In this document: positions 10,171 to 38,696 of the stretch, piece after piece | Layout: every line of letters begins with the position of its first letter | Position numbering within the stretch: the first letter of the stretch is position 1 | Origin: Mytilus trossulus | Lineage: Eukaryota | Direction of reading: 5' to 3' | Length of the DNA stretch: 64,000 nt | Assembly (NCBI RefSeq): GCF_036588685.1 | Contig: NC_086381.1 | Location: 25,358,001 to 25,422,000, forward strand | Notes under the pieces: model-generated | Databases searched by the model: none | The model's input: only the letters and a program-made list of their open reading frames with translations | Told to the model about the DNA's origin: nothing | Program-made: the position numbers and the translations under genes

Positions 10171-10298
10171 TAAAGTGCTAATTTTTGAATTTTCCTTGGA
10201 GTTCAGTATTTTTGTGTTTTTACTTTTGAAACCATACTTGTTTTATTCTTTAATAAAAAGCAAAGCAATACAAAAATAAATGATTGGTTTGTTTACAG

Positions 10299-12756
10299 AG
10301 CACCAGTGGACTATGGTCACCAGTACCGAAGGTGCCTAAGGGGCACACATCACTTGGGCACCTTAAGACCAGGAAGACGCCTAGCAAATTTGAATTGTCA
10401 CCTTCAGAACAATATACTGTAAGTGTTGCAATTAACTTTGAGACAAAAATAGAAATAATTTGTTTTGCTGCCTTAAAGACTAAAATGTCAAGATCTTCAA
10501 ATTATAGTGTATTTAAGAAATACAATTAATTTTATTAAACTGTTATTCATTTGATCAATACAAAGCAATACAGAAATTAATTAAATGATTGGTTTGTTTA
10601 CAGAGCACCAGTGGACTATGGTCACCAGTAGCTAAGGGGCAGACCCTTCAGACCCTTCAGACCAGAAAGTCTTCCCCTACTTTAAAGACGCCGACCAGGA
10701 AGAGGCCTAGCATTCAATTAGAATTGTCACCTTCAGAACAATATACTGTAAGTATTGCAATTAACTTTGAGACAAAAATAGAAATAATTTGTTTTCCTGC
10801 CTTCAAGACTGAAATGTCAAGATCTTCAAATCATAGTGTAAGAAATACAATTAATTTTATTAAACTGTTATTCATTTGATAAATACCGTAAAATTGAAAC
10901 CATATCTGTTTATTCTATAATGAAAACAAAGCAATACAAAAATTGATTAAATGATTGGTTTGTTTACAGAGCACCAGTGGACTATGGTCACCAGTAGCTA
11001 AGGGGCAGACCCTTCAGTCCAGAAAGTCTTCCCCTACTTTAAAGACGCCGACCACGAAGAGGCCAAGCATTCAATTAGAATTGTCACCTTCAGAACAATA
11101 TACTGTAAGTATTGCAATTAACTTTGAGACAAAAATAGAAATAATTTGTTTTCCTGCCTTCAAGACTGAAATGTCAAGATCTTCAAATCATAGTGTAAGA
11201 AATACAATTAATTTTATTAAACTGTTATTCATTTGATAAATACCGTAAAATTGAAACCATATCTGTTTATTCTATAATGAAAACAAAGCAATACAAAAAT
11301 TAATTAAATGATTGGTTTGTTTACAGAGCACCAGTGGACTATGGTCACCAGTAGCTAAGGGGCAGACCCTTCAGACCAGAAAGTCTTCCCCTACTTTAAA
11401 GACGCCGACCAGGAAGAGGCCTAGCATTCAATTAGAATGGTCACCTTCAGAACAATATACTGTAAGTATTGCAATTAAATTTGAGACAAAAGTAGAAATA
11501 ATTTTGAATAAGAATGGAAATTGTTAAAGAAACAACAACCCTACTGAAATGTAAAAATACTATTTCAATATTTGTCTTCATTAGCCCTCGCACAATATTA
11601 GAAAAAAAAAGGTTTGTTTGTCTTGAAAAACATAAAAAAATATTCTGTTACAGGCTTCCACTGAGTTGTCTGTATGCTTCATATAAAAAAATCCATCTAT
11701 TGCTTATTATGATTTCAAGCCCATCACATGTAATTTGAATGTGCATATCTATAAAAAAAAGAATAAAAAAAAGATTTGTTTTTCATTTCCCAAAATTTTA
11801 AATTTTCATTATGAACTTTTTCAATTAGAATTCTAAGCAATTCAAGTGCTTATAAAAATGATTATCAGTTATTGATCAACAATTTTAAAAGAATCTTTCT
11901 TAATTGCAGAGAGTAACTAAGATATGGTCGCCCATAGACTGCATATCGCCACAAAGTAAAAGTCAGTCCCTACACCTTGTATGGCCCCCTCAAGATCAGT
12001 ACACTTTTGCTGACGACAAGGCTGTAACCACATCTTCAAATCATAGTGTAAGTAAAACAATTAATTTTAATAAAATGTTATTCATTTGATAAATACCATA
12101 AAATTGCAGAGTTTGATGTGTTTGAACTTTTGATTTTGCCATTTGATTTTGGACTTTCCTTTTTGAATTTTCATTGGAGTTCAGTATTTTTGTGTTTTTA
12201 CTTTTGAAACCATACTTGTTTTATTCTTTAATAAAAAGCAAAGCAAAACAAAAATAAATGATTGGTTTGTTTACAGAGCACCAGTGGACTATGGTCACCA
12301 GTACCGAAGGTGCCTAAGGGGCACACATCACTTGGGCACCTTAAGACCAGGAAGACGCCTAGCAAATTTGAATTGTCACCTTCAGAACAATATACTGTAA
12401 GTGTTGCAATTAACTTTGAGACAAAAATAGAAATAATTTGTTTTGCTGCCTTAAAGACTGAAATGTCAAGATCTTCAAATCATAGTGTATTTAAGAAATA
12501 CAATTAATTTTATTAAACTGTTATTCATTTGATCAATACCGTAAAATTGAAACCATATCTGTTTATTCTATAATAAAAACAAAGCAATAGAAAAATTAAA
12601 TGATTGGTATGTTTGCAGAGCACCAGTGGACTATGGTCACCAGTAGCTAAGGGGCAGACTCTTCAGACCAGAAAGTCTCTCCCTACTACAAAGGCGCAAA
12701 CTAGGAAGACGAAGACACCTAGCAAATTAGAATGGTCACCGTCAGAACAATATACT
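10299..12756 (+). CDS. Array of 7 tandem phase-0 exons encoding basic Ser/Thr-Pro-rich repeats (STSGLWSPV...SPSEQYT)
   Basis: Exons 10299-10418, 10604-10747, 10970-11104, 11327-11461, 11910-12047 (divergent), 12277-12396, 12619-12756. Each has a (t)tRcag acceptor and gtaagt donor, a length divisible by 3 and no stops. Confidence 0.75.
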
Positions 12757-13891
12757 GTAAGTATTGCAATTAACTTTGAGACAAACATAGAAATAATTTG
12801 TCTTCATTAGCTTCAAACAATTATATAGTATTTTTTTTTTCTTTTAAAAATGTTTGTTTGTGTTAAAAAATAGAGTCTTTGCAGAGTTGTGTGTACTCTT
12901 GCAAAAAAAACCTTAACATTATGTTTTGTAATTTGAGTATGGACATTCTGGAATAAAAGCTGAAAAACAATTATCAACATCTATCAGACTATATGTAAGT
13001 TTTATTCCAAATATAAGTTAAAATTCAACCTTTTAAATTAAACTTATTTTTGTTTATTAAGAATGCCATACATTTGAAACATTAGATTTTTTTCTTAATA
13101 CAGAGATCATTTGTTTTTCTAAACAATATATATTGGAGAATTAAAATAATTATATTTTCTTTGTGTCATTTTACTGTGGATTTACATATCTGTCAACTCA
13201 GTCTTCAAACTAAGCACTACACAGGGTAAATTTCATATCTTCTCTCAATTATAAAATGGTTAAGTAGATACATAAATCTGTCATCAACAACTGATTAGGG
13301 ACAGATAATATTGCTTCAAAACAGATGTTTAAAACAAAAGCTAAGCGTGTAAATTTTTGATAACCACTCAAGTACAGAAATAACCAGATAAATGGTAAGT
13401 ACTATTGTTTCAATTTTTACATCATCTGACATGAAAAAAAACCAACTTAATGTTTTAAGAATACTATATGTTTTAATAAGCCATGATCTTTGATAGGAGC
13501 TGTAGTTGCATTTTATATACATGCATTGGAAATTAAGAATATCATGATCATTGAATCTTAATGATACACAAGGTCAAAGATATACAGATGTGATATATAT
13601 CTAACTGGCAATTGAATATTTTACTTCATTAGCATGACATGATAGTTAAATTAGATTTAATTTGGATATTCAGATACTTTCATTCTTAACTAATTTTGAC
13701 AAAATGACATATTTACAATATCTACCGCCCTTGAAGTACTGCAAAAAGACGGAAAACGGTCTTAAAACTACAGAAAAAAATAAAGCTTCAATGATGAAGT
13801 CAGTTTTCTTTTCAATTGAAACATCACCGTAGTATTAGAACTTTTTTTAATTATAATAGTAAAATACAACCACTTAATAAATATAAAAAAA

Positions 13892-14015
13892 GACAAAGTG
13901 GTATGATTGCCAATGAGACAATTAACTCTACATAAGACACCAAAATGACACAGCAATTAACAACTATATATATAGGTCACCGTACGGCCTTCAACAGTGA
14001 GCAAAGCCCATACCT
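13892..14015 (+). repeat. Short interspersed repeat (SINE-like)
   Basis: gtggtatgattgccaatgaga...ataggtcaccgtacggccttcaac recurs at ~25010-25165, ~40165-40290 and as a stub at ~59393-59415. Confidence 0.6.
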
Positions 14016-14220
14016 CATTGAAGGTACATTTAAAAATCAATATAAATATATGGATTTATACTAAGAATACTTAGGTCATTTATTTTGTACTACAAAAAAA
14101 ATCATTTACTCTAGCTGTTTATAGTATCAAAATTCATGCTTTTCTTTGCAAAATACATAGTTATAAACATTCTAAACTTAGACATCACTTTTCCCCTTTA
14201 TCAGGAACAAGATTTCAAAA

Positions 14221-17200
14221 ATGAAAGCTCTTTATCAGTTCAAAGAAGAAGGAATAGATGAACCTTTGATTTATTTTGAAGACTTTTACGAATTTATTAG
14301 GGAAAGACAAACGCCTGATGATAAAAAACTGCACAAGCACAATGTGCTAAGGGAGTTTAAAGGTCACAAAGAGGGAATCAAAGACCTTACTCATGGCAAA
14401 GCAGTGACAACAACATCAGTGTCTAAATTTATATTTAATCATTTTGATGACTTTAAGATATGCACAGAAATAGGCACTGATATAAGCAACTGCTTCTTTT
14501 CTGAGAAACTAGAGGCTCTAAAGAGCCTGTGTCGCTCACCTTGGTCTATGTGCATATTAAACAAAGGACACAAATGGATTCATGACAAAATTGTATTTTG
14601 GTGATGGTGATGTGTTTGAAGTTCTTACTTTACTGAACGATTTTGCTTCTTACAATTATATCTATCATGAACTTTGCCCATTAGTAACAGAGAACTATAT
14701 TTGGTAAAAATTTACATAAATTTACCAAATTAATGAAAATTGTCAAAAATTGACTATAAAGGGCAATAACTCCTTAAGGGGTCAATTGACCATTTAGGTC
14801 ATGTTGACTTATTTGTAGATCTTACTTTGCTGAACATTATTGCTGTTTACAGTTTATCGCTATCTATAATAGTATTCAAGATAACCAAAAACGGCAAAAT
14901 TTCTTTAAAAATTACCAATTGGAGGGCAGCAACCCAACAACCAGTTGTCCAATTCATCTGAAAAATTCAGGGCAGATAGATATTGACTTGATTAACAAAT
15001 TAACTTCTTGTCAGATTTGCTCTAGATGCTTTGGTTTCATAGTTATGAGCAAAAATCTGCATTTTACCCCTATGTTCAATTTTAGCCGTGGCGGCCATCT
15101 TGGTTGAATGGCCAGGTCATCGGACACATTTTTCAAACTAGATACCCCAAAGATGATTGTGGCCTAGTAGTTTCAGTGGAGATTTTGTAAAAGATTACTT
15201 AGATTTATGAAAAATGGTTAAAGATTGACTATAAAGGGCAATAACTCCTAAAGGGGTCAACTGACCATTTTGGTCATGTTGACTTGTTTGTAGATCTTAC
15301 TTTGCTGAACATTATTGCTGTTTACAATTTATCTCTATCTATAATAATATTCAAGATAATAACCAAAAACAGCAAAATTTCCTCAAAATTACCAATTCAG
15401 GGGCAGCAACCCAACAACCGATTGACCGATTCATCTGAAAATTTCAGGGCAGATAGTTCTTGACCTGATAAACATTTTTATCCCATGTCAGATTTCCTCA
15501 AAATGCTTTGGTTTTTGAGTTATAAGCCAAAAACTGCATTTTACCCCTATGTTCTATTTTTAGCGGTGGCGGCCATCTTGGTTGGTTGACCAGGTCACGC
15601 CACACATTTTTTAAACTAGATACCCCAAAGATGATTGTGGCCAAGTTTGGATTAATTTGGCCAAGTAGTTTCAGAGGAGAAGATTTTTGTAAAAGATTAC
15701 TTTAATTTATGAAAAATGGTTAAAAATTGACTATAAAGGGCAATAACTCCTAAACGGGTCAACTGACCATTTTGGTCATGTTGACTTATTTGTAGATCTT
15801 ACTTTGCTGAACATTATTGCTGTTTACAGTTTATCTCTATCTATAATAATATTCAAGATAATAACCAAAAACAGCAAAATTTCCTCAAAATTACCAATTC
15901 AGGGGCAGCAACCCAACAACCGATTGACCGATTCATCTGAAAATTTTAGGGCAGATAGATCTTGACCTGATAAACATTTTTATCCCATGTCAGATTTCCT
16001 CAAAATGCTTTGGTTTTTGAGTTATAAGCCAAAAACTGCATTTTACCCCTTTGTTCTATTTTTAGCCGTGGCGGCCATCTTGGTTGGTTGACCAGGTCAC
16101 GCCACACATTTTTTAAACTAGATACCCCAAAGATGATTGTGGCCAAGTTTGGATTAATTTGGCCAAGTAGTTTCAGAGGAGAAGATTTTTGTAAAAGACT
16201 ACTTTAATTAACGAAAAATGGTTAAAAATTGACTATAAAGGGCAATAACTCATAAACGGGTCAACTGACCATTTTGGTCATGTTGACTTATTTGTAGATC
16301 TTACTTTGCTGAACATTATTGCTGTTTACAGTTTATCTCTAACTATAATAATATTCAAGATAATAACCAAAAACAGCAAAATTTCTTCAAAATTACCAAT
16401 TCAGGGGCAGCAACCCAACAACCGATTGACCGATTCATCTGAAAATTTCAGGGCAGATAGATCTTGACCTGATAAACATTTTTACCCCATGTCAGATTTG
16501 CTCTAAATGCTTTGGTTTTTGAGTTATAAGCCAAAAACTGCATTTTACCCCTATGTTCTATTTTCAGCCGTGGCGGCCATCTTGGTTGGTTGACCGGGTC
16601 ACGCCACACATTTTTTAAACTAGATACCCCAATGATGATTGTGGCCAAGTTTGGTTTGATTTGGCCCAGTAGTTTCAGAGGAGAAGATTTTTGTAAAAGT
16701 TAACGACGACGGACGACGACGGACGACGGACGCCAAGTGATGAGAAAAGCTCACTTGGCCCTTCGGGCCAGGTGAGCTAAAAAAGGACTAACACCAAAAC
16801 ACTGCTAGATTTGTACAAGTCTGTTGCTGAAGTTGATCTCAACTGTTTTAATGACCCAGAATTTAGAGATGTATATGTTCCTACACTGGCAATTAATTAG
16901 TAAGCATGTTTCTCGATTCCTTAATACAAGACACAATGTCAATGTCAGTAAAATTATGTTTCTTTCACAAGATTCATTGCCAAATTATACACAAGAAAAC
17001 AATGACACAGCACGTTTTCATTTGCGAGATGATATTTTCCTGGGAAAGCTTACAGAATCTGTTCTCCACATAGAAACACCAGCACAAGTTGACGTTCTAG
17101 AAACAAACACCTATAAATGTGATGTGTGCCACACAACTTCCCTGCCAAAGCCACTCAGTATTAAGGACTTCTCCGTTGTGCAAGAGTGGTATCTAGATGT

Positions 17201-20200
17201 TCCTTTAGATGTTCAAATTCTATTTCAAACCTTCATTAACAAAATGTCCTTTCGAAAATCAAAACACAATGATTTATTGACAACGAAATTAGATAGAGTG
17301 TATGGGCTGTGTGATGCAATGCTGAATACATTTAACAGGACTTATATTGGAATTTTACAACAAGCCAACACTGACGAACTTGCAATGCATTTTAAAAGTA
17401 TCACCTCCGTATTTTCTATTACAAACAGTACAGGTATATCTACCAGTCTGAATCAAGCAGAGCGAAAAATCAAGGAAAGAACGGTAAACGACTTATGCTA
17501 TTACAATACATATTTAAAGCGTTATCCACTAAGATATGAGACACAGGACGGTGAACTTGAAAATTTGGTCAGTTTGCAGGAGTGTCATCTGATACTGATG
17601 ATGGATAATTTAGTAAGACTGATAACCTATTCCGACCCAAACCCTGGTGAAAATAGGACAGGACAAGTTTGTACCCTGCCACTTACCCTCCAAGGCCTTC
17701 CAAAAGACAATGTCATAACTGACAAATGGCACCTTGAAAATTGCAACAAAACAGACAGATGTCTCTGCAAGAATGCAACCACACTGACAAAGAATGATTT
17801 TGATTTATCACTCATTTCATTGAAACCCGACGAAAAAGAAGTGTGGGATAGATTTAGTCAAGTCCTGACATGGGGAAATATTTCACTTTGGAAAAGACTT
17901 AGGGAAAGTAAGCATATTTTTAACAAATAAAGATGAAAAAGAAACGAACAGATTCAAAAGAAATATGTTTTCATCTCTTTTTACTTTTCTTACATATATC
18001 TAATGATAACATGATGACAGACATGACAATGAAGTTATTTTCTTTTCTATTTTCAAAACAGACAACAAATGCAATATAGAAAGACTTTCATTAGCTAATG
18101 TGTTGCAGCATTGTTGCAAATAGACATACTATTAGCTGAAATACACAATCGAAAATATGAAATTATCTTATCTACAGCAACAACAACGACAATAGCAGGA
18201 ACACAAAAACTGAAAACAATTATAAGGAGGAAAATGCAACATCATGATTAGGCATAATACAAAGCACTTAATAACAAATTATAGTTTACAAAAAAACAAA
18301 ACACTTTAAAAAAGGAATTGTAAATCAGACATTTTCATGATCTTAGAGCGTAAGCAATGTTTCCCCCTCAAATGTTTTCTAGCATTGTTTTGCTGTCATA
18401 TTAAAATCTGGTTATTAGTTATACTAAATGATAGGTTATGAATGACAATTAGAATAACAAATAGATACAGAGTATTTCTTGTAATTGTTGATTTATTTCT
18501 TTTAGCAAATTTGATTGATATCGCCCCAAAAAGTATGACGACAGAAGAAGAAATAGTACAAGGTGAAGAAGAAGAAATAATGGACTCTGAAGAAAATGAG
18601 GATAACTTATCAGACCTGGTAATATTTCATATTCTAGCATGCCTACTCAATGTACTAAGGTGTAGAGGTACTATTTATGAGAACCTGCTTGACATCATAC
18701 CTAAAAGGAAAACTATAGTACCTTTACTTGCAGTATCTTTTTTTTCAACATAATTTAGACATATTCAAAACTCAATATAAAATTAAACTCAATATCAACT
18801 TGAAAATATGTACATGTTAACATGATTTTAGCCTCCCCCTAAAACAAAGCTGATTTTTACAATTTCTTAATTTTTTTAAAATTGCAATCTGTCAAACTAA
18901 AGTCTGAGGCAGTCAGAGTCCCTGTTCAAATATGTTTCATTTCTTCCAATATGACATCCCTCTTGAGTGTCATCTATGATTCAGTTTTGATAAGATTCAG
19001 CTGAAATCTGTATACCTTGAATGAAAAGATGACACCTTTTTATTTTAAATTGCAGAATTATTAAAATTTAGTTATACGGTTCGCTAAATAGAACTTCAAG
19101 TCAAACAAGTATGCAATTTTGATGTGACTTGCTTAAGTATGGATAAAAAAGATAATTGTTTAGCCATGTCAATAGGACAGCAACATCATGATTCAGTTTA
19201 AATAAGAAGTAATCTGTCATACTGATATTTCTTTTTATTTATTTTAGTTGGACTTGGAACCTGATGAACTGGATATGATCCAGTATGAGAGTACTGAACA
19301 AGAAACAACAGAAACTATGTTTCTTGAAGCAGAAACGTCTGATCATGAAGATTGTACTGACCCAGAAGAAGAAAACTTAGGTTCATTACTAGAGACAGCA
19401 AACTTGTTGTCTTACACATCAAAATTATTGATAACGAAATAAATGATCATGATTTATCAGGTATATATGAGCTCACTATGGATGAAGAGGAACTAGAACT
19501 GTCATTTGGGAACATGTCATTGGACAACCAAACTTCGAAAAGCAACAACAGTCTCACCTCAACGGATGAGTCAAACGTCTTAAATTTGTTTGGTTTCAAG
19601 AAATTTAAAGTGCCGCCTTTGTTGTGCCGACATCCACCACCTGCAACTGGCAGGGATGACGACATTTATAAATTGAAAGATATCATGGATGACGTCATTG
19701 TAAGGGCGTATAAACGTTCCACACGAAGGAGTTGATAGAATACTGTTTGGCCCAGACAATAAAATAGGTGCAAATCTACTAGAAATTGTTAAAGATCCAA
19801 GATACAACCATTTCTTACCAGAATTTCCTCTCCTTCATTTGAGGAAGTCAAAAATAAACACCCTTTTCAGTTCATACAAAGATACAGGACTACTTCAACT
19901 ACTGATGTACATGTGTGATGAAGAGAAAAAGGAATGGCCAAAACTAATATCCATGGATCACATAGATGTTGCAACAAAATATGTCCGCCGACTGTCATTG
20001 TCTTTTCACATATCATTTATGTGCAGATTTCTACAAAGTTTAGAGCCAGAGGAAGCACTGGCTGTCATTGATATGCTAGAAGAAGGGAAAATTGAAGAAA
20101 CTTCTAGGTTATGGAGTAGTAAGTTTCAGGATTTTATGAATACGGGTATAACTCAAAATTGCACATTTGCTCTGCATGCAGACATGATGCAACACTGTGA

Positions 20201-22580
20201 TGAAGTTGTTGCTGTCTACCTTTCAGAAAGATTGGGTGGAAATACAGGCTACAATTTACTTCTTGGAGCTGTAAAAAGGTCCCTTCCCTTCTCATTTCTG
20301 AATGGTGCATCTTCTTACGGCCCATATTGTGCTCAGTTACTTATTCAACATTACAGTGCAGGACATTTCCATCAGTGTCTCAAAAAAGCACTCTACTCCA
20401 CACCTATCGGGAACAGCTCGGTAAATTTTGCCTGTGATTCTAAAAGAGAGATGGATCATCAAGATGCCCTCCGAGGATTCAGATCAGGATCATCAATGAC
20501 ATCTGTTATAGGTCGTATGTCACTAATAGATTCTTTTAATGAAACTCATCAAATAAGATCAAAGAGTCATACAAACTCCAAAGAAGACTCAAATGTGGAC
20601 TGGGCTTTATCAGAAACTGACCTGCATCATATTATTCCAACAGTTGCTCTGATACTTCGACGTAATGGTTTGTGTTTAGAGGAAAATAATTATCCAGAAA
20701 ATGTTTACACGTCAGAAAAACTTGTACTGTCACCATGTGTATTAGATAATACAACATCAGATATAGGAAAATACCTGATAAAACGCTATCTAGCAAACAA
20801 TAGCTTCCTAGGAATGACTATGGATGACATACCTGAACTTAATGAAACTAGTGGACCGGCCTCTTTTGTCAGAAGGGTAAAACGTTCAAAAGGAGTAACA
20901 ATCAAAAGAACTGCAGAAAAAGTGACACTTCAAACCAAAACGGAACGTCAGGTGAAGGAGGAAAACAGAAAAGCATTACTAAAAAGAGAAATGCAGAGGG
21001 CAAGTTTTCTTAGTTCTGAAATGAACATGTGCCAAGCATTAGTTAAACCAGACTGTACAAAGCCAAAGGTGATGAAGTCCAAAGGAATGCAGCAAGCACT
21101 GGTGAATTTATTACAGGAATTAAAATGCCAACAAAACCTTATTTCGCTTAATCTGAAGTCAGTACCAAAAGAAATCACTACCACAGTGGAACTTGTGACA
21201 ATAGAATTCGCTGGTGTTAAATTTTAAACGAAGGTTACCTCAGACATACAGTATATAAAATATGTTCAAAATGCAGTTATAAAACCAATCCTTCGACAAT
21301 TCCCAACAGCAGAAAGACTTATACTTTGTGAGGAAAAATATTCCTTTACGCCAGATACCTTCAAGGCAGCTACACACCAACAGAGAAATTTAAAAAAAAA
21401 AGCAACCATTGCTCATCTGAGAACATCCCATGAGATGATAAACCAGAATCAATTTCGAAAAGAAGATATTGTGACTACCAGAGAAGGAAATACCATCATG
21501 AGTACTTATTTGGCTGCTAATGCGAATCAACTTGAAATAGGGGCTGATTTTATTCTCGATATTGACAGTGAATTGAATATGAAGGTTGTTCCATGTGAAC
21601 ATAGTGTAGAATGCATATGTCAAAACTATACTATACCAATACAATGCTCATTCAAGAAAACGTGTCCTAAGCCAATTATACAAGATCTAAATGACATACA
21701 CCAAAGAAAAGGTGAAGCTGAAATGTCTCAGGTTGACTGGTTGTGTATTTGCAAAGCAGGGCTTTCTCCGTCAAAAGCAGCATGTAGCATTGTGACATCA
21801 GGAGATATAGATGCCATTCCGATTCATATGTTTGCACTTTCAGACAACTGGCCCTTTGCACAAGGGAAATATAGCCACCCAGTATTTGTCGTATTACAGA
21901 AACCAAACAAAAAGATTGATGTTTACAATATAATGTCTTTAATAGAATTCTTTCACAGCCATTTTGAAGATGTTGACATTGCAAAAAAAAATTCTACTGT
22001 ACTCTGCATGGGTGGGAATGATTTTATTCCTAAATTTTATGGAATTTCTCATCAGAAAATGCTTAATTTGTTCCTTAATAATGATTTCTTCCGAACAAAT
22101 TTACTTCAAAAGGATAACAGAAACATCTACCAAATTGATACTCCAACCTATAAGATGTTTATGAAGAAGTTATATTGTCCAAAAACCATGAATTCAGAGA
22201 GTTCCTTTGATGATGTGCGAAAAGCAACTATGATTAGTAAACACAAAAACCAGAACACTGACCTCGTATACAGCAAGTCTTTGAGGAGTGGACAGTTGTG
22301 GTTGCCACCGGAGTCAGCAATTGAAAGGATTGCTGATATAATCAACCTGCAAATAGAGTATCTGTCTACTGCTGGAAACCCTATGGATTTATTACCAAAC
22401 TTCCTAGGAAAAGACTGTCTACGTAAGACCGAAGACAACGAAGTAGAATATTACTTTGGTCCAGATAGTAAAGGGAATGTAAGTGAAATAATTGGCCAAA
22501 AGAGGCGTATGGAAGACACACCACAAAAAGGAAGAAGAAAAAAAAGAATGACCACATCTACGCCTGTTAAATCCAAGTAG
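14221..22580 (+). pseudogene. Divergent Academ-like transposase fused to a C-terminal XPG/XRN-like (PIN/FEN-fold) 5'-nuclease; spliced and disrupted
   Basis: Reconstructed from 14221-14506, [HINE], ~16783-17907, exon ~18505-18618 and 19248-22580. Frameshifts at ~16880, ~19421 and ~19708; one in-frame TAA at 21225-21227 (ORFs 19839 and 21435 share a frame). Motifs in Academ order: LMMDNL, ILFGPDNK, FPLLH, ERLG...LLL.AVKRSLPF...SSYGPY, FACDSKREMD; then TIEFAG, LILCEEKY...KAATHQQR, GEAE, TSGDIDA, GGNDFIPKFYG, WLPPESA; basic NLS-like C-terminus. Confidence 0.7.
14507..16782 (-). mobile_element. HINE/DINE-1-like non-autonomous Helentron, copy 1 (4 internal ~480-500-bp units), inserted in the Academ-like ORF
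   Basis: Minus-strand start TTTTTAGCTCACCTGGCCCGAAGGGCCAAGTGAGCT (subTIR plus inverted repeat), (CGT/CCGT) microsatellite, tandem units from ~14750, 15226, 15728, 16229, and end GGTGAGCGACACAGGCTCTTTAGAGCCTCTAGTT (subTIR plus hairpin). Inserted in an A/T run with no TSD. Confidence 0.85.
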
Positions 22581-23547
22581 TCAGTTGCTTTGAATGCTCT
22601 TTGTTTAGATGAAGAATGGACCTTTCCTGAAAAGTTCTAATTATATGTGTTCATTTTCATAATGATAAAGCTATATGGTTTATTTACTTCAAATTGTCAT
22701 TATATACTTATAGGATAATTGTTACAGGTATCAAAACTTTTTTTTGATTAAGTGGATCTACATAGAAGAATTAAACTAAAACAACAAGTTAAAATGCAAG
22801 ATCTTATGTTTTACCTTTACATAGAATTATCAATATTATTACAATTTAAAATTTGCATTTTTGTCAGCAATAGGGTATTCCTAAATCTTTGAAAACATTT
22901 TTAGTATTATTTGGGTATTTATTTCAATTGTTCATTTACATTGTAAAAGATGTTTTTATACTTAATAGGAATGTAATATGTGTTGCTGGACAATAAACAT
23001 ATTAAATTATGCAATCAATCAATTTTTCATTTTCACCTTGTTTTTATTCAAAGAAAAATATGGTTTATCATTGTTAACTTTTTATGCCATATATATATGA
23101 TATATTTTTATTAGATTATGTATAATAATTCAATTTCATTGTTTGTTCATGTTGGTTATAATTTGCATGTACATTAAAGATATAAAATATATTTCAAACA
23201 TGAAAGTGGTTGTTAATTTCTCTGTTAAATGACTTTATTTTCTAGTTCAGCTTCAAAATTCAAATTATACCTTTTTTTTTTAAATAAACTTAACACATAA
23301 TTTATTAAATAGGACACAATTAAGAATCATTGATGTGTATTTACTATTAATACATTTGGCCAACAATTATCACTTCAAAATCAGGTTAACAAAACATGTG
23401 GTTTCTGTCAACTTGCAAATTTTAATTGAAATGACAGTTTAATTTGTATTTATGGTATTTTCTAAGTGATGCAGATGATAAGCCCAACATCATTTTGATG
23501 TGTTTTCTCGGGCATAGTTGCTGGACTGAACTTAATTTATTTTTTAG

Positions 23548-26500
23548 GGTCAAGCGCAGAAATGTTTATATGGCACTTATACAGCATCCCCTCAAACCTC
23601 ACCCATGACAGAAAAGGAATACAAAGTGTATAAGCCTTTGACCAAATTGTTTCAAGATTCAGTAAGTATTACATTGTACATCAACATGAAGTGCAGCTAT
23701 ACAATTGATTTGAAAATACTTTTGGAACATATGTTCTTCTGGAAAGCTGATACTTTGACATAATAGTTAAAGTGCATTTTTATCTTTGTATAAGAGTATT
23801 TTTCCTATGTGATTAATAAAAATTTTGATATATACATTTGAAATGTTTGATTTGTTTTTTAAAACAATATTTATGTGACAATTAAAATAATGACTTTTTT
23901 ATTTTTGTCATTTAGTTAAGGTCTATTTAACTGTGAATTTATACATATCTTCTTGATTTATTTGATAGGGTGAAGGACAGAAGTTTCAATTTGGGAGCAT
24001 GTACCAGCCTCCGCCTCAGGCAGTATCTGAAAAAAGAATTGGACAGAATCAGACCATCCCAAAACAGCTGTTTCAAGATTTAGTAAGTATAAGATCAATA
24101 TTAAGTGCAGCCTAAACCAGTGAAATGAAAGTACTTTTCTAATAAGAAAAATATGCTTATACTTTGAAAAAATAGAAAGAGTGCATTTTTTTTTTTTTAT
24201 CAAAAATGACTTTCATTATACAAGAACATTTTTCCTTGTTGATTATGAAAACTTTGATACTCCAAAATGTTCATCTTTTGCTTTATTTTTTTTTAGTAGA
24301 AGCAAACAAAATAATGGCTTTATATTTTATTTTAATATAATATACTTGATTGATGTAGTGTATGATTAATTGTTTCAGGGTGAAGAATCAAGACAAAAAT
24401 CACAAGGTAATAAATTAAGTCACTACAGTAGATAACAATTAACTTCTGTTTCATTGATTGTAGCTGTATATATCTTTCTTAACAAAAAACAAACTGACAT
24501 CTAATCAAAGTATTACTTGACTGAAGTTGTTAGTTAAACAGTTACAATGCAAAAGTTTATATGATATTTATTTAACTAATCAGCAATTTTTGTTTATGTT
24601 TCATAAACAAAAATTGCTATAATCAAATAACATTGTGTCTAAATGATTAATACATGTTCTATATTTTTTTTTTAAACTGTTTTAGGAAAAATGGCCATTA
24701 GCATAAAGGAGACTTTACAACAGCGACAATGGTCGCTCATTCCAAAATTAAAAGGGGCACCTGCCCTAGCAAGGGAACTCTTAAAGAAGATGGTGCCAGA
24801 GGAAGAACTTTTTCAAGCTTCTTTTTCTGGCAAAAACAAAGATGGAAATAAACTGGATGATGTCCAGATGGAAATGATAAAAGGTAAAGAGAAAATATTT
24901 ATTAATGCATCTAGTTTTATAAGCTGTAAATTTAACCAAAAACACTCATGTGTACATGTATGACCTGTTCAAATAATCCTCTAGCCATTCCTACATCTAA
25001 TTTAAAAAGAAGATGTGGTATGATTGCCAATGAGAGAACTCTCCAAAGGAGACCAAAATGAAAGAAATTAACAATTATAGGTATTTGTATGACATTCAAC
25101 AATGATCATAGTCCATACAGCATAGTCAGCTATAAAAGGCCCAGAAATGTCAATGTAAAACAATTTAGCCCATTTAATTGCACCAAATGATGTTGGATTA
25201 AGCTAAACCACTTATAAAACTCCAAATTTTCAAATAAATCTGTCACTTTAATTAAATGTCTGTTTGTTGATGAATACCACACGTTTTTTTGATAATAGGT
25301 CAAAATTGTTGCATGAAGGATATAGTGTTTTGACATTTTATGTGACTGTTTATTTTATCTTCTATTATAAATCACCGGATTATAAATACTACGCAGTTTT
25401 TAACCTACAGCAGAGAATCTGACATTGTAAACAATAAGGCAATTAAATATCATCTGGTTTCTATCTTTCATACTTTTCTATGTATGTATCTATGAAATAG
25501 TTCAGTTTAATAAAATGTAGCTATAGAAGCAGTCACGTTTATTTAGTATAGTTGTGTTATATATATAAGAACCCAAATGCAGTTATAAATACACAACAGT
25601 TTGGCGACGAGGATGGGATATTAATTGTCTTTAATTCAAAGGACTTTTTCGAAAATAATTTTCTGTGAAATTACCTTGGTTAATTAGACAATGGCGGGAT
25701 ATATAGGGAAAATAGAGCCGTTTGATGATAGTACAGAAACGTGGAGTTCGTACGTTGAAAGACTGGAACAATATTTTGCAGTGAACGCACTTGAAAATGA
25801 GAAGAAGGTTCCAGCTTTATTGACATTATTAGGTGGGAAAACCTATGGACTTCTTAGAAATTTGACTTTACCGGATAAACCCGCAACTAAATCGTATGAC
25901 GATATTGTAAAGTTATTGAAAGACCATTTAAGTCCGAAACCATTGATTGTCGCAGAGAGATTTCGTTTTTATAAACGTTATCAAATACAAGGAGAAACTG
26001 TAAATAAATATGTAGCAGAACTTAGAAAGTTTGCCGAATATTGTGAATTTGGGAACTTAAATGAATCTTTAAGAGACCAGTTTGTGGTTGGACTTAAAGA
26101 TGAACAGACACAAAAGAAACTGTTAACTGTGCCGGACTTAACTTTTGTGAAAGCTATCGGAATTGCTATAGCCGTAGAGACTGCAAACAAAGATGCAATT
26201 GAGTTAAGAGGGAAATTCCACACCGAAAGTTCTGTAAACAGGATACAACGACAGCAACGTATTAAAACCGCCACCAAGAAAAACAGATAGACAAAAATCG
26301 TTCGTATGCTACCGATGTAATGGAAAGAATCACAAAGCAGATACATGTAGATTTAAAGACGCGGTGTGTCACAGCTGTAATAAAAAAGGGCACATTCGTA
26401 AAGCGTGTAGATCATCCGGTAAACCGAAACAAAGACCGGCGCAAAAGAATGTTAATTCCTTGGATAATCAATCACGGGAATACACAAGTGATGAGGATGA

Positions 26501-29500
26501 TTACTTAGGAATTCACAGTGTTAAAAATTCCAATCAGGATTCAATTTGGATTACGCCAAATGTGCATGGAAAAGAAATTAGAATGGAGCTGGATACAGGT
26601 TCAGCCGTGTCAGTAATTTCTGCTGTGGATTACGACAAGTATTTTCAAAATGAAAAACTTGAAAGTGCAAATGTCACCCTGAAAACGTATACAGGAGAGT
26701 TGTTAATTCCAACTGGATATATGAATGTGCAAGTTAAATATAATGGTCAATGTGAAAATCTTAAATTGTATGTAGTGCAAAAAGGTGGCCCTGCATTGTT
26801 TGGGCGTGATTGGTTAAGGAAAATCAATTTAGATTGGAAAAATCTCAAGTGGATTAATAAAATTTCAGTATCAAGAAATTCAAATGAAAAGCTGGATTTA
26901 TTACTGAAGGAGTATTCAAATGTATTCCGTGAGGGAATAGGGTGTGTTGCAGATATAAAAGCACATCTCACGTTAAAAGAAAATGCTTCACCGAAATTTG
27001 TAAAAGCTAGACCGGTGCCATTTTCAGTCAAACCGCAAGTGGAGCGAGAGCTAATAAGGCTTGAAAAGGAAGGAATAATTTCAAAAGTCGACACAAGTGA
27101 ATGGGCATCACCAATTGTCCCCGTTATGAAATCAAATGGTACAATTCGTATATGTGGAGATTTCAAAACCACCGTGAATCCTATGCTTAATGTGGATCAG
27201 TACCCGCTTCCGCGGACCGATGAGATATTCGCTACTCTCGCAGGAGGACAGAAATACACGAAACTGGATCTCCGTAATGCATATTTACATATGGAGGTAG
27301 ACGATGAGTCAAAACCATTGATGACAATCAATACACACAAAGGACTGTATCGTTATAATAGGATGTTATTCGGAATTGCGTCAGCACCAGCTATATGGCA
27401 AAGAACAATGGACCAGGTATTAAATGGACTTGATAGTGTACAATGCATGTTGGACGACATGATTATAACGGGCCCTGATGACGAAACACACTTACAAAAC
27501 TTGAAAAATGTGTTACAGAGACTTCAGAACTATGGTTTAAGGGCAAACTTGCAGAAATGTTCTTTCCTCAAGGACAAAGTCATATACTGCGGACATGAAA
27601 TTAGTGCAGATGGACTCAGGAAAACTACAGACAAAGTACAAGCTGTAATGGAAACTCCGACTCCGAAAAATGTAAAGGATGTACGTGCATTCTTAGGACT
27701 AATAAACTATTATCACAGATTTATGCCTAATTCAGCAACTGTACTTAAACCATTGAATCAACTGCTAGAAAAAGAGCGAATATGGCGCTGGACAGACGAT
27801 TGTGAAAAGGCCTTCAAAAAGGCAAAGGAGCTTATTACGTCAGACCAAGTGTTAACACACTACAACCCCGAATTACCAGTCCGTTTAGCGTGTGATGCTT
27901 CGCCATTCGGACTTGGAGCAGTGTTATCTCACGTTATGCCAGATGGATCGGAAAGACCAATTTCTTTCGCATCGAGGAGTCTTACAAAATCCGAAAAGAA
28001 CTATGCACAAATCCAAAAGGAGGCGCTTGGAATAGTGTGGGGAGTGAAGAAATTTAACACATTTCTGTACGGTAGGAAATTTTCTTTAATTACTGATCAT
28101 CAACCTTTAACAGCAATTTTTAATCCTGAAAAATCAATTCTCCTGGTATAAACCACCCATCAATGTAGACATAAAACCAATACTTGCACCAAATAAACAA
28201 GTATAATCAATACTTGTACAAAATATCCAAGTATAATCAATACTTGTACCAAATATCCAAGTATAACCAATACTTGTACCAAATATCCAAGTATATATAT
28301 GTACACACTCTGCATATAAACGCCATAAAAGGCTATAATAAATACCAAATACTTTGTAAAGTGGATAGTCGCACGACAACGCCGATGCTCTATATTTAAT
28401 GATAAATAATCTCAATACATACATATATATCTACACATATAATATATAACTCAAACATCAGTATCGACACAAAAAACTCTCCAAATAAAAAGCTTCATAA
28501 ACTTTAACCAGAATTAAAATTTACCAAGAAAATTCGACTGCTCAGATTGACGATGTCGTGCTGAATGATAACATAGGCAATAAAATACCGCGAAAATAAT
28601 TTTGAAGCGGGAAAACATTACGCCCTCTATGCTACATATGATGAAACACCCAGGAGAAATTAATTTCACTCTAATGCACTGCCCGTTTAAACGAATGAAA
28701 TTATAATTCTCCTGGTATAAACCACCCATCAATGTAGACATAAAACCAATACTTGCACCAAATAAACAAGTATAATCAATACTTGTACAAAATATCCAAG
28801 TATAATCAATACTTGTACCAAATATCCAAGTATAACCAATACTTGTACCAAATATCCAAGTATATATATGTACACACTCTGCATATAAACGCCATAAAAG
28901 GCTATAATAAATACCAAATACTTTGTAAAGTGGATAGTCGCACGACAACGCCGATGCTGAACCCAAAGAACGGGAAGCTATTTAGTACTATGTATGCAAA
29001 ATTATATAGTCCAAATGTAAATAAAACAAAAAAGATATTAATTTCCCAAATTCTGAGAAACAATCCTACATTTTGATAAATCTTCTTTCACATAGCCATC
29101 CTTTGAAGTTTCCGACTTCCAACGTCCATGACGTTTAAAAAGTCTATCTGAAAAACCAAACCTTGCAGCGGTAATAGCACCACAAGATCGTAAACTATAT
29201 AATCCGTATGCTTTTATATCGGTAACAAATGGAGAAAATTGCAAAGTAAATTCCCTCATCCTTGTATAGTTTAAAGGCTAATTTGTTGAACGAAAAACAA
29301 AAAGTTCTTTCACTTGTGACAATTTCTGAATGAATACAAATTTTAATCAGATTAAATGCTACTCTATGCATATATAATTCCAAATTAGGACTGGACGCAA
29401 ATTTGTGCGTTTTTCACAATAATAAACCAGTTTCCATCTCTGTAAATATCCGTTCTTCCGATACAAATTGAAATGTGTATTGACTTGCAATTAATTGCAT

Positions 29501-38214: not shown

Positions 38215-38696
38215 CCCTCTCAGACAGTTATGTATAATTCATGAATAGTCATGAACATTTCATGAACTGTTCATGAACAGATTTCATGAATGGTTCATCA
38301 TATCTTCATGAACATTTGATGAACAATTCATGAACTGAAAATCGACAGTAATGTTCATGAACTTTAATGTTCATGAACAATTCATGAACAAGAAAGGTTC
38401 ATGAACATTTAAGTGTTCATGAACTTCAATGTTCATGAACAATTTATGAACAATTCATGAACAAGAAAGGGTTCATGATCATTGTTGTTCATGAACATTT
38501 AAATGCTCATGAACCTTTCTTGTTCATGAATTGTTCATGAACATTAAAGTTCATGAACATTACTGTCGATTTTCAGTTCATGAATTGCTCATCAAATGTT
38601 CATGAAGATATGATGAATTGTTCATGAAATCTGTTCATGAACAGTTCATGAAATGTTCATGCATATTCATGAATTATTCATTATCATCTCACAGGG
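38215..38696. mobile_element. Fold-back element with CCC...GGG termini built from GTTCATGAAC palindromes (CMC/EnSpm-like, non-autonomous)
   Basis: The left ~210 bp is the reverse complement of the right ~210 bp. Ends ccctctcagacagttatgtataattcatgaat and (reverse complement) ccctgtgagatgataatgaataattcatgaat align without gaps. Confidence 0.75.

What the first reader, a model, noticed from the sequence alone, without database searches (positions are those of the whole stretch)
14221..22580. Highly divergent Academ-like transposase-nuclease
Seen: six fragments join into one spliced protein of roughly 1,600 aa. Putative catalytic residues: D in MMDN (~17604), D in GPDN (~19755), H in PLLH, E in DSKRE (~20448). 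The nuclease half reads more like XRN1/2 (GEAE, DIDA, GNDFIP, HQQR) than typical AcademX XPG (HEEAD, DTD, TGCD). It has Glu where Asp is usual (TIEFAG, LCEEKY) and lacks the C-terminal Cys-rich finger, ending in a basic NLS-like tail. Inference: an undescribed Academ lineage or sister group. It may mobilise the GGG-ended elements, although described Academ termini are different.
Basis: partly seen in the sequence, partly recalled or inferred. Interest (0 to 1): 0.78.

Follow-up and report, generated by a model that had tools for sequence, protein, structure and literature searches.

The report
Dead copy of nuclease-carrying DNA transposon
The stretch is a broken copy of a large cut-and-paste DNA transposon of a bivalve whose single giant protein joins a transposase to a DNA/RNA-end-trimming nuclease; it belongs to a divergent, so far unannotated branch related to the Academ-type transposons that are already known to be common in bivalves.

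Summary
The motifs and fragments are real, but they are not exons. They are pieces of one formerly continuous, intronless ORF of a 10,330-bp DNA transposon (window 13199-23528; termini CAGTC...GACTG; 4-bp target duplication AACT). A paralogous empty site fixes its ends.

The gene is broken by:
- a young 2.27-kb nested repeat (14509-16778);
- about 160 missing profile positions;
- a frameshift near 19702;
- one TAA at 21225.

Intact paralogs in the same genome encode 1,887-1,900 aa without introns.

The core gets no Pfam hit. It is nevertheless collinear with DUF6589-plus-nuclease transposon proteins (hhalign 92%, P 6e-7), and protein-language features point to DUF6589. Fold matches to P-element, Hermes, Transib and RAG1 transposases are only weak.

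The 4-bp duplications (18 of 22 copies) fit the AcademX lineage.

At least 13 non-autonomous copies match the termini at 97-100%. In other samples the stop reads AAA and, in one, the frame is restored, so the family was active recently.

Verdict: a divergent Academ-like lineage, moderately interesting. The "spliced" and "GGG-ended" readings are not supported.

The parts
13195..13198 (.). 5' copy of the target-site duplication AACT
   Evidence: AACT also follows the 3' end. The empty-site paralog L028 joins window 13198 to 23530 with a 3-nt overlap.
13199..23528 (+). Whole transposon copy: 10,330 bp, about 8.06 kb without the nested repeat
   Evidence: Boundaries come from the empty site L028 and from deletion derivatives L025, L026 and L027, which begin and end at the same bases. 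18 further short copies share the same termini.
13199..13210 (+). 5' terminus CAGTCTTCAAAC
   Evidence: Present in 18 of 20 fetched short copies with at most 2 mismatches. 137 first-look candidates match the 5' 202 bp.
14275..14508 (+). N-terminal fragment of the ORF (family HMM positions 3-76); ATG at 14221
   Evidence: hmmsearch E 1.8e-13; tblastn to L015 aa 19-101.
14509..16778 (.). Nested young high-copy repeat (2.27 kb) with four ~502-bp internal tandem units and a 3' GC hairpin. It is not part of the gene.
   Evidence: 98-99% identical to the 40 best-scored copies, with 13,294 first-look candidates. Tandem units. It is absent from derivative L027, which reads straight across.
16890..17912 (+). 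First half of the transposase core (HMM 258-595), with the candidate first catalytic Asp in MMDN at 17604-17606
   Evidence: hmmsearch E 1.1e-109. The Asp is conserved in 32 of 33 family members. HMM positions 97-257 have no counterpart between 16840 and 16890.
17913..19477 (+). Degenerate acidic linker, broken over three frames
   Evidence: ORFs 18442-18753, 19248-19442 and 19478-19735 lie in different frames and are acidic. The region corresponds to the variable, disordered linker of intact paralogs. No repeat match in the genome.
19478..19717 (+). Conserved segment LLCRHPPPATGRDDDI before the second core half (frame 2)
   Evidence: hmmsearch E 5.5e-22; tblastn 56% to L015 aa 866-910.
19698..19706 (+). 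Frameshift from frame 2 to frame 0 inside conserved coding sequence
   Evidence: Translations. Run X5 carries 5 extra bases after 19702 (41.1 of 41.1 depth), which brings the frames together. Run X1 lacks them (0 of 11.5).
19728..21224 (+). Second half of the transposase core plus linker. Candidate second Asp (GPDN) at 19755-19757, invariant His (PLLH) at 19836-19838, candidate Glu (DSKRE) at 20448-20450.
   Evidence: hmmsearch E 2.1e-232. D920 and H948 are conserved in 45 of 45. The Glu was nearly invariant (at least 90%) in alignment A2. hhalign to DUF6589 proteins aligns these motifs.
21225..21227 (+). In-frame TAA stop inside the first strand of the nuclease domain (VKF*TK)
   Evidence: Sister copies L025 and L026 read AAA. 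Runs X1 (20 of 20), X5 (103.7 of 122.7) and an RNA-library contig of X16 read A at 21225.
21231..22577 (+). FEN/EXO1/XPG/XRN-type 5' nuclease domain and basic tail; natural stop codon at 22578-22580
22581..23528 (+). 3' untranslated and subterminal region ending in GTTGCTGGACTG
   Evidence: The 3' ~750 bp (22777-23528) recur at 94-97% in eight short copies listed over that span and the last 200 bp at 97-100%. 131 first-look candidates match the last 200 bp.
23529..23532 (.). 3' copy of the target-site duplication AACT

Best explanation
Window 13199-23528 is a pseudogenised autonomous copy of a terminal-inverted-repeat, cut-and-paste DNA transposon of a bivalve.

Shown:
- Its single, originally intronless ORF (about 1,900 aa in intact paralogs) encodes an N-terminal region of unknown role and a two-part transposase core. 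The core carries conserved Asp, Asp, His and Glu residues and is split by a long acidic disordered linker.
- The C-terminal domain is a 5' nuclease of the FEN/EXO1/XPG/XRN (PIN-like) superfamily, followed by a basic tail.
- The core is a very divergent relative of the DUF6589 cores of transposase+nuclease elements in the same genome.
- The element makes 4-bp target duplications, as reported for the nuclease-bearing AcademX lineage.

Inferred mechanism: the DDE-type core nicks and transfers the 3' ends at the CAGTC...GACTG termini with a 4-bp stagger. The fused 5' nuclease cuts or trims the complementary 5' strands or flaps, so that the element is fully excised. This is a division of labour like TnsB/TnsA in Tn7 (analogy from recall).

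This copy is dead in the assembled genome. However, its short deletion derivatives are 97-100% identical at the ends, and other sampled individuals or species carry versions without the stop or the frameshift. The lineage was therefore mobile very recently.
For: Mobility:
- Empty-site paralog L028, plus derivatives L025, L026 and L027 with the same ends.
- 18 of 20 fetched short copies have both termini. TSD is 4 bp in 15 and 5 bp in 3. With the window and L025-L027 this makes 4 bp in 18 of 22.
- A second subfamily pair, L016/L017, is 98.4% identical over 7.6 kb. It has a 15-bp perfect TIR, TACTCCAGCGACAAA, and 4-bp TSDs ACAA and ATAT.

Intronless ORFs: 1,900, 1,887 and 1,891 aa.

Breaks in the window copy.

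Conserved acidic, Lys and Arg positions.

Core:
- hhalign to DUF6589+nuclease proteins is collinear over 834 columns (P 1.4e-4).
- By segment: core2 Prob 92.1, P 6.2e-7; nuclease P 0.0064; core1 P 0.0075; 12 off-diagonal controls P 0.096-0.54.
- Aligned motifs: PD.K with GDgK, LHLRKSK with WHILKN, LDTqREM with LDEAHEM, GEAE with HEEAD, DID with DTD, GGNDF with SGCDY.
- The three best named ESM Atlas clusters all carry PF20231, with scores 0.95, 0.94, 0.91.
- In the second look, Hermes entries take the top 3 of 993.

Literature: AcademX makes 3-4-bp TSDs and encodes a nuclease (passage in PMC10045372).

Recent activity and polymorphism.
Against: - PF20231 itself does not hit any family member: none at E<=1 for 7 window pieces and 3 intact paralogs, and none among 26 members at E<=0.01. 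The genome-wide PF20231 scan gave 103 matches, none at this family's loci.
- Whole-length hhalign probability is only 52%.
- That DUF6589 is the Academ transposase core rests on recall and circumstantial text, not on a call.
- No Academ reference sequence or terminus could be compared.
- The role of the nuclease in transposition is inference only.
Confidence: 0.8

Rival explanations
1. The fragments are exons of a functional, spliced gene in the window, possibly a host or domesticated gene.
For: - All catalytic-looking motifs are retained in this copy.
- RNA-library contigs of two runs cover parts of 19400-22250.
- In other samples the stop reads AAA, and in X5 the frame is restored. An open version may therefore exist elsewhere.
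Against: - Collinear, intron-free alignment to intact 1,887-1,900-aa ORFs.
- The in-frame TAA and the frameshift lie inside conserved blocks.
- A nested young repeat sits in the gene and about 160 profile positions are missing.
- No joints in any of the four runs laid.
- The locus has transposon ends, a TSD and an empty-site paralog.
Confidence: 0.03
2. The family is not an Academ relative. It is an independent superfamily in which a P/hAT-like DDE core was fused separately to a FEN/XRN-type nuclease. On this view the resemblance to DUF6589+nuclease elements is convergent architecture plus weak profile noise.
For: - No PF20231 hit.
- Whole-length hhalign probability is only 52%, and nuclease-to-nuclease P is only 0.0064.
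- The best fold match of the core is the P-element transposase.
- Foldseek prefers XRN for the nuclease.
- No CXC domain.
- The D-W-H motif of DUF6589 proteins is replaced by PLLH.
Against: - core2-core2 gives Prob 92.1, P 6.2e-7, with clean off-diagonal controls. All four collinear segment pairs are the best in their rows.
- Catalytic motifs coincide in both domains in the alignment.
- The independent ESM-feature search returns DUF6589 clusters as the top three.
- Same domain order, and the same short TSD class as AcademX.
Confidence: 0.15
3. The nuclease is simply the ordinary XPG/FEN-type nuclease of AcademX elements, much diverged, with no special kinship to XRN exoribonucleases.
For: - hhalign aligns its motifs one-to-one with the HEEAD, DTD and SGCDY motifs of DUF6589+nuclease proteins.
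- A profile search of PDB sequences gives no XRN hit.
Against: - Foldseek E 1.4e-7 for XRN2 against 2.8e-3 for Rad2, with TM normalised by the query 0.41-0.47 against 0.29-0.31.
- XRN chains align 313-325 residues against 245-263 for FEN1 and EXO1.
- The GNDF(I/L)P motif resembles XRN (recalled).
Confidence: 0.55

Closest known systems
AcademX lineage of the Academ superfamily of eukaryotic DNA transposons (Kapitonov and Jurka 2010; Kojima 2020; neither paper could be read here)
   Same: - Very large single ORF joining a DDE-type transposase to a C-terminal nuclease of the XPG/FEN superfamily.
- Short TSD: 4 bp here, against 3-4 bp reported for AcademX (passage in PMC10045372).
- Academ elements are abundant in bivalves (passages in PMC10294476).
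   Different: - No detectable Pfam DUF6589 signal.
- The core is split by an acidic linker of about 230 aa.
- PLLH replaces the D-W-H motif.
- Glu replaces Asp at two nuclease metal-ligand positions.
- Nuclease motifs are GEAE, DID and GGNDF rather than HEEAD, DTD and SGCDY.
- No CXC Cys-rich C-terminus.
- Termini could not be compared with described Academ termini.
DUF6589 (PF20231) + nuclease + Tesmin/TSO1-like CXC proteins of the same genome and of Mytilus and echinoderms (L023:1719-7145, L024:928-7425, P0025-P0071)
   Same: - Same order of parts and similar length (1,808-2,165 aa).
- Collinear hhalign match over 834 columns, with coincident catalytic motifs.
   Different: - About 15% identity in the hhalign match, and no BLASTP similarity.
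- Those proteins reach the Pfam cut-off for DUF6589 and some carry PF03638. The window's family does neither.
XRN1/XRN2 (Rat1) 5'-3' exoribonucleases and EXO1/FEN1/XPG 5' nucleases
   Same: - Seven conserved acidic positions plus a conserved Lys and Arg, in the order expected for this superfamily. Their equivalence to the superfamily's residues is inferred from motif order and from recall.
   Different: - No sequence-level hit to any of them.
- Two ligands are Glu.
- A C.C......C.C cluster is inserted in the domain.
- It is fused to a transposase.
P-element, Hermes (hAT), Transib and RAG1 transposases
   Same: The core model aligns over 248-317 residues, from the first strands across a large helical insertion to the helix carrying the Glu.
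   Different: - Foldseek finds nothing at E<=0.001.
- No GTP-binding, BED or THAP parts were found by Pfam.

Membership tests
Academ superfamily, AcademX lineage | Transposase core homologous to Academ transposases | tested here: inconclusive
   Tested only through DUF6589 proteins as a stand-in: hhalign core2 Prob 92.1, P 6.2e-7; the top three ESM clusters carry PF20231. That DUF6589 equals the Academ core is recalled, plus circumstantial text (Academ and DUF6589 are both enriched in rust fungi: passages in PMC5751038, and bioRxiv 10.1101/2025.10.24.684071). No Academ reference sequence was available.
Academ superfamily, AcademX lineage | A nuclease (XPG-type) encoded with the transposase | tested here: met
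   The C-terminal domain folds as a FEN/EXO1/XPG/XRN 5' nuclease. That AcademX encodes a nuclease comes from a passage in PMC10045372.
Academ superfamily, AcademX lineage | Target-site duplication of 3 or 4 bp | tested here: met
   4 bp in 18 of 22 copies with both ends and a 5-bp match in 4 of 22. 4 bp in both copies of the L016/L017 subfamily. L045 and L048 have identical flanks and are one event.
Academ superfamily, AcademX lineage | Terminal sequences like those of described Academ families | not testable with these tools
   Repbase and the Academ papers were not available. Termini here are CAGTCTTCAAAC...GATGCTGGACTG and, in another subfamily, TACTCCAGCGACAAA.
Pfam DUF6589 (PF20231) | Score over the family's gathering cut-off (27 bits) | tested here: not met
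   No hit at E<=1 for 7 window pieces or 3 intact paralogs. No hit among 26 members at E<=0.01. 103 genome matches, none at this family's loci.
FEN/EXO1/XPG/XRN 5' nuclease (PIN-like) superfamily | The fold | tested here: met
   [not shown]
FEN/EXO1/XPG/XRN 5' nuclease (PIN-like) superfamily | Cluster of about seven acidic metal ligands plus a conserved Lys and Arg | tested here: inconclusive
   Acidic residues are conserved at seven positions, with K1486 and R1493 in 42 of 42. All are kept in the window copy. Their equivalence to the ligands of FEN1 or XRN1 is inferred from order and secondary structure. No residue-level superposition was available.
XRN1/XRN2 family | Specific kinship to XRN over other 5' nucleases (XRN_N signature) | tested here: inconclusive
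   [not shown]
RNase H-like DDE transposases with an insertion domain (P, hAT, Transib/RAG1) | RNase H-like fold carrying D, D, E | tested here: inconclusive
   [not shown]

The most novel reading that the evidence does not exclude
The family is a previously unrecognised deep lineage, or sister group, of Academ transposons. Its fused nuclease is an XRN-like 5'-3' exonuclease with Glu-substituted metal ligands, and it does the 5'-strand processing of a two-nuclease cut-and-paste reaction. The lineage is still mobile in living mussel populations, which would give a tractable system for asking why some transposases need a second nuclease.
Probability: 0.3. Interest if true: 0.6.

Novelty: new variant of a known kind. 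Interest (0 to 1): 0.42.

Why it matters
**Annotation.** Academ-type elements are among the least understood eukaryotic cut-and-paste transposons: no structure, no biochemistry, and no Pfam model for many of them. This family shows that a whole branch escapes current domain annotation. It has 603 representative proteins at E<=0.001 in 1.84 billion clusters, and the named ones come from abalone, clam and mussel. In gene sets it appears as 'uncharacterized protein'.

**Practical use.**
- It defines the ends, TSD and non-autonomous derivatives of one such family.
- It corrects a tempting multi-exon gene model into a pseudogene.

**Experimental use.** It offers intact natural ORFs (L015, L016, L017) for testing what a fused 5' nuclease contributes to transposition.

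**Limits.** Nuclease-bearing Academ elements and their abundance in bivalves are already in print, so this is not a new principle.

Tried and rejected
**Sequence searches that gave nothing useful**
- Pfam on the window pieces, on three intact paralogs and on 26 aligned members.
- phmmer and profile hmmsearch against PDB sequences gave only spurious eL29 and IpgC matches.
- BLASTP between the family and DUF6589+nuclease proteins.

**Searches for the ends of the window copy that failed before the copy comparison**
- An inverted-repeat scan.
- The L016 TIR as a pattern: 3 matches with 3 mismatches, against 1.2 expected by chance.

**Representatives search.** It listed only close family members, all 150 at E<=1e-42. 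It did not show whether the tail reaches DUF6589 proteins.

**Taxonomy.** The cluster look-up gave no names or organisms for 10 proteins.

**Ends of 'classical' DUF6589+nuclease elements.** The attempt to define these for L023 and L024, for a side-by-side comparison of termini and TSD, did not succeed. For L023 only a 5' boundary near base 154-156 emerged. L024 runs off the fetched locus. I dropped it.

**Upstream repeated ORFs.** They gave no Pfam hit at E<=0.1 for 6 of the 12 ORFs listed.

**Literature**
- Kojima 2020 (DOI and PMC7165386) and Yuan and Wessler 2011 (PMC3093488) are not held.
- No paper holds both 'Academ' and 'XPG' as whole words.
- 'DUF6589' occurs in one preprint and 'PF20231' in no relevant paper.
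- Of the papers cited I saw passages only.
- Supplements are closed. The curated bivalve Academ library of PMC10294476 and the Academ alignments used in PMC5751038, which could show that this family is already catalogued, were not seen.

**Rejected readings:** host or domesticated gene; spliced gene; mobiliser of GGG-ended elements.

Full report
**1. What is at the coordinates**

The window is AT-rich (28-39% G+C). It comes from a 1.3-Gb eukaryotic assembly. Named relatives of its proteins are from abalone, clam and mussel, and earlier notes of this scan call the genome a mussel.

Long + strand ORFs lie at 14221-14604, 16824-17930, 19478-19735, 19839-21227 and 21435-22580. None of the pieces has a Pfam or PDB sequence match.

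**2. The fragments are one broken ORF, not exons**

A six-frame search of the genome with 19839-21227 gave 27 matches. The best non-self match is 64% identical and the others 42-48%. Several lie in open frames of up to 1,900 aa.

Three loci carry uninterrupted ORFs of 1,900, 1,887 and 1,891 aa (L015, L016, L017). Against the 1,900-aa protein the window aligns collinearly:
- aa 19-101 at 14257-14508
- aa 303-636 at 16932-17876
- aa 866-910 at 19595-19729
- aa 913-1888 at 19734-22577, as one frame-0 alignment

The last block crosses a single TAA at 21225-21227 (TIEFAG VKF*TK).

The step from 19717 to 19728 is a frameshift inside a conserved block.

A family HMM maps positions 3-76, 258-595, 704-784, 790-1316 and 1319-1778 in order. 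Positions 97-257 have no counterpart: only about 50 nt lie where they should be. The acidic linker 17913-19477 is split over three frames.

The 14509-16778 gap is a nested repeat with four ~502-bp internal units. It is 98-99% identical to the 40 best-scored copies, out of 13,294 first-look candidates. It is absent from a sister copy that reads straight across the site.

All searches used single pieces or natural intact paralogs.

**3. It is a transposon with defined ends**

L016 and L017 are 98.4% identical over 7.6 kb and unrelated outside that stretch. The shared part ends in a perfect 15-bp inverted repeat, TACTCCAGCGACAAA, flanked by 4-bp duplications ACAA and ATAT.

For the window's own subfamily, a paralogous segment on another chromosome (L028) joins window 13198 directly to 23530, with 3 overlapping bases. 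This is an empty site.

The element is therefore 13199-23528 (10,330 bp, about 8.06 kb without the nested repeat). It runs 5'-CAGTCTTCAAAC...GTTGCTGGACTG-3' and is flanked by AACT. Its 3' end, read in reverse, resembles the L016 repeat in 9 of 12 bases.

Deletion derivatives share both ends:
- L025 and L026: 13199-13395 joined to 21210-23528, 96-99% identical
- L027: a further deletion derivative with the same two ends

The terminal 200 bp have 137 and 131 first-look candidates. At least 13 copies match both ends, at 98-99% for the 5' 200 bp and 97-100% for the 3' 200 bp. An older set matches at 82-87%.

Of 20 short copies fetched, 18 had both termini. The duplication was 4 bp in 15 and a 5-bp match in 3. 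Two loci (L045, L048) have identical flanks and are one event. L034 and L046 failed the pattern. With the window and L025-L027 the count is 4 bp in 18 of 22.

The elements sharing this copy's ends are thus CAGTC...GACTG derivatives. I found no link to 'GGG-ended' elements.

**4. The copy is dead here but the lineage is young**

The sister copies L025 and L026 read AAA where the window has TAA.

I laid public contigs on 19400-22600:
- Position 21225 reads A in run X1 (20 of 20), run X5 (103.7 of 122.7) and an RNA-library contig of X16. The X1 contig spans 19762-21498, which is sequence that only a full-length copy has.
- Run X5 carries five extra bases after 19702 (41.1 of 41.1), which would bring the two frames together. 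X1 lacks them (0 of 11.5).
- No joints were seen in any of the four runs.
- RNA-library contigs cover 20606-22249 (X16) and parts of 19400-21974 (X15), including the supposed intron. The tool warns that DNA can be present in such libraries, so transcription is suggested, not shown.

No other autonomous copy of this subfamily is in the assembly (best protein match 64%).

**5. The nuclease half**

An AlphaFold model of the C-terminal 506 aa of the intact paralog, made with 25 aligned sequences, has pLDDT 84.9 and pTM 0.86.

Foldseek against the PDB:
- XRN2, XRN1 and Rat1 rank first (E 1.4e-7 to 3e-4, prob 1.00, TM by query 0.41-0.47).
- Rad2/XPG follows at 2.8e-3 and FEN1 at 3.9e-3.

|---|---|---|
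| EXO1 | 13.3 | 261 |
| FEN1 | 12.9 | not recorded |
| XRN1 | 12.3 | 323 |
| XPG | 12.2 | not recorded |
| XRN2 | 11.7 | 325 |
| Rad2 | 11.7 | not recorded |
| T5 FEN | 10.7 | not recorded |

Membership in the 5'-nuclease superfamily is therefore firm. A special tie to XRN is suggested by Foldseek and by the longer aligned length, but it is not resolved.

Conservation across 45 aligned family proteins, counting those with a residue at the column:
- E1431: 42 of 43
- E1475 and E1476: 42 of 42
- K1486 and R1493: 42 of 42
- E1604: 40 of 41
- E1606: 41 of 42
- D1634 and D1636: 41 of 41
- D1704: 38 of 38

That these correspond to the seven acidic ligands and the Lys and Arg of FEN1 or XRN1 is my inference from motif order, strand ends in the model and recalled numbering.

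**6. The transposase half**

The 1,111-aa core model is mediocre: pLDDT 65. It is high for aa about 870-1190 of the paralog and below 50 around the first Asp and in the acidic linker.

Foldseek finds nothing at E<=0.001.

These Z-values are in the range the tool calls common. The fold evidence is therefore suggestive only.

Conserved residues are D548 (32 of 33), D920 and H948 (45 of 45), and E1153 (at least 90%).

**7. Relation to DUF6589 and Academ-like elements**

PF20231 has 103 matches in this genome, none at this family's loci. Two of the matching ORFs, L023 (1,808 aa) and L024 (2,165 aa), have DUF6589 in the middle.

Their relatives in Mytilus and echinoderms carry DUF6589. Some also carry a Tesmin/TSO1-like CXC domain: PF03638 in 2 of 47, and the name in 4 Mytilus entries.

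BLASTP shows no similarity to the window's family, but profile-profile comparison does:
- Collinear over 834 columns, P 1.4e-4, Prob 52%. Three fusion or partial proteins were left out of the DUF6589 set.
- By segment: core2 against core2 Prob 92.1, P 6.2e-7 over 262 columns; nuclease against nuclease P 0.0064 over 352 columns; core1 against core1 P 0.0075; linker P 0.045.
- All 12 off-diagonal pairs give P 0.096-0.54.
- The alignment puts the functional motifs of both domains on top of each other.

Independently, language-model features of aa 866-1400 return three DUF6589 clusters as the best named hits. Scores are 0.95, 0.94 and 0.91, sharing 186-194 of 256 features. Of 30 hits, 18 share that family set.

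A profile of five own-genome core segments finds 603 representatives at E<=0.001, 435 at 1e-10 and 206 at 1e-30 among 1.84 billion. The 150 listed are all close family.

**8. Comparison with what is in print**

- A passage in PMC10045372 states that AcademX makes 3-4-bp duplications and AcademH 9-10-bp. It links this to their nuclease and helicase respectively.
- Passages in PMC5751038 say Academ cores had no Pfam match in 2017.
- Passages in PMC10294476 report a bivalve-specific expansion of Academ and 100 curated consensus elements.
- The primary Academ papers were not held, and supplements are closed.

I therefore could not test whether this lineage is already catalogued. That DUF6589 is the Academ core is recall plus circumstantial text.

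**9. Mechanism**

Shown:
- A mobile element with inverted termini and a 4-bp duplication.
- One ORF with a conserved D, D, (H), E core and a conserved 5'-nuclease domain.
- Non-autonomous derivatives that keep only the ends.

Inferred: the core cuts and joins the 3' ends with a 4-bp stagger. The fused 5' nuclease cleaves or trims the other strand. The basic tail brings the protein to the nucleus. Conserved Cys/His clusters (C..C; WH...C....C.C; C.C......C.C) bind zinc for DNA contacts.

**10. Verdict**

- It is a new variant of a known kind, of moderate interest.

Noticed in passing
window 14509-16778: A 2.27-kb very young, very high-copy repeat: 98-99% identical to the 40 best-scored copies, with 13,294 first-look candidates. 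It has four ~502-bp internal tandem units, begins CTAGAGGCTC and ends in a GC hairpin (GGCCCTTCGGGCC) followed by AGGTGAGCT. No clear target duplication at the filled or empty site. It looks Helitron/Helentron-like (recalled resemblance, not tested).
   Followed up: partly
window 10182-13198 and 23530-25320; L028 (G000:C1:17064000-17073999): The transposon sits in a segment duplicated on another chromosome at 91-98% identity. The upstream part is a tandem array of ~360-bp units, each with a 68-96-aa + strand ORF.
   Followed up: partly
window 25311-34724: LTR retrotransposon of Ty3/gypsy type: gag 25691-26290, protease-RT-RNase H 26364-28151, integrase 32851-34209. A ~290-bp repeat lies at about 25311-25598 and again at 34435-34724 (98%), probably its LTRs. 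Parts of it are 97-99% identical to many copies elsewhere.
   Followed up: partly
window 38618-40102: 494-aa ORF with a hAT C-terminal dimerisation domain (PF05699, E 3.6e-6): a hAT transposase remnant or gene.
   Followed up: no
window 21225 and 19702: The stop and the frameshift of this copy are polymorphic in public data. 21225 reads A in three of four runs laid. Five extra bases follow 19702 in run X5 but not in X1. More intact versions of this very element therefore exist in other individuals or closely related species.
   Followed up: partly
L023 (G000:C14:48541000-48550999) and many short loci such as L030-L032: The 5' ~560 bp of a DUF6589+nuclease element (starting near L023:154-156, ATCAGTGGGAAAGCC) recur in dozens of copies at 84-90%, as part of a separate element of 1 kb or more. 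The ends were not resolved.
   Followed up: partly
window 13878-14021 and 24991-25163: A ~140-170-bp repeat occurs both inside the transposon's 5' untranslated region and in the 3' flank, and several times in L025 and L027 (74-83% identity). Probably a small MITE or SINE.
   Followed up: no
L015:1285-6987 aa 745-800: The acidic linker of the intact paralog holds a perfect tandem peptide repeat (SVDDMIEETTTP, about five copies). This shows how freely this linker varies in length within the family.
   Followed up: no
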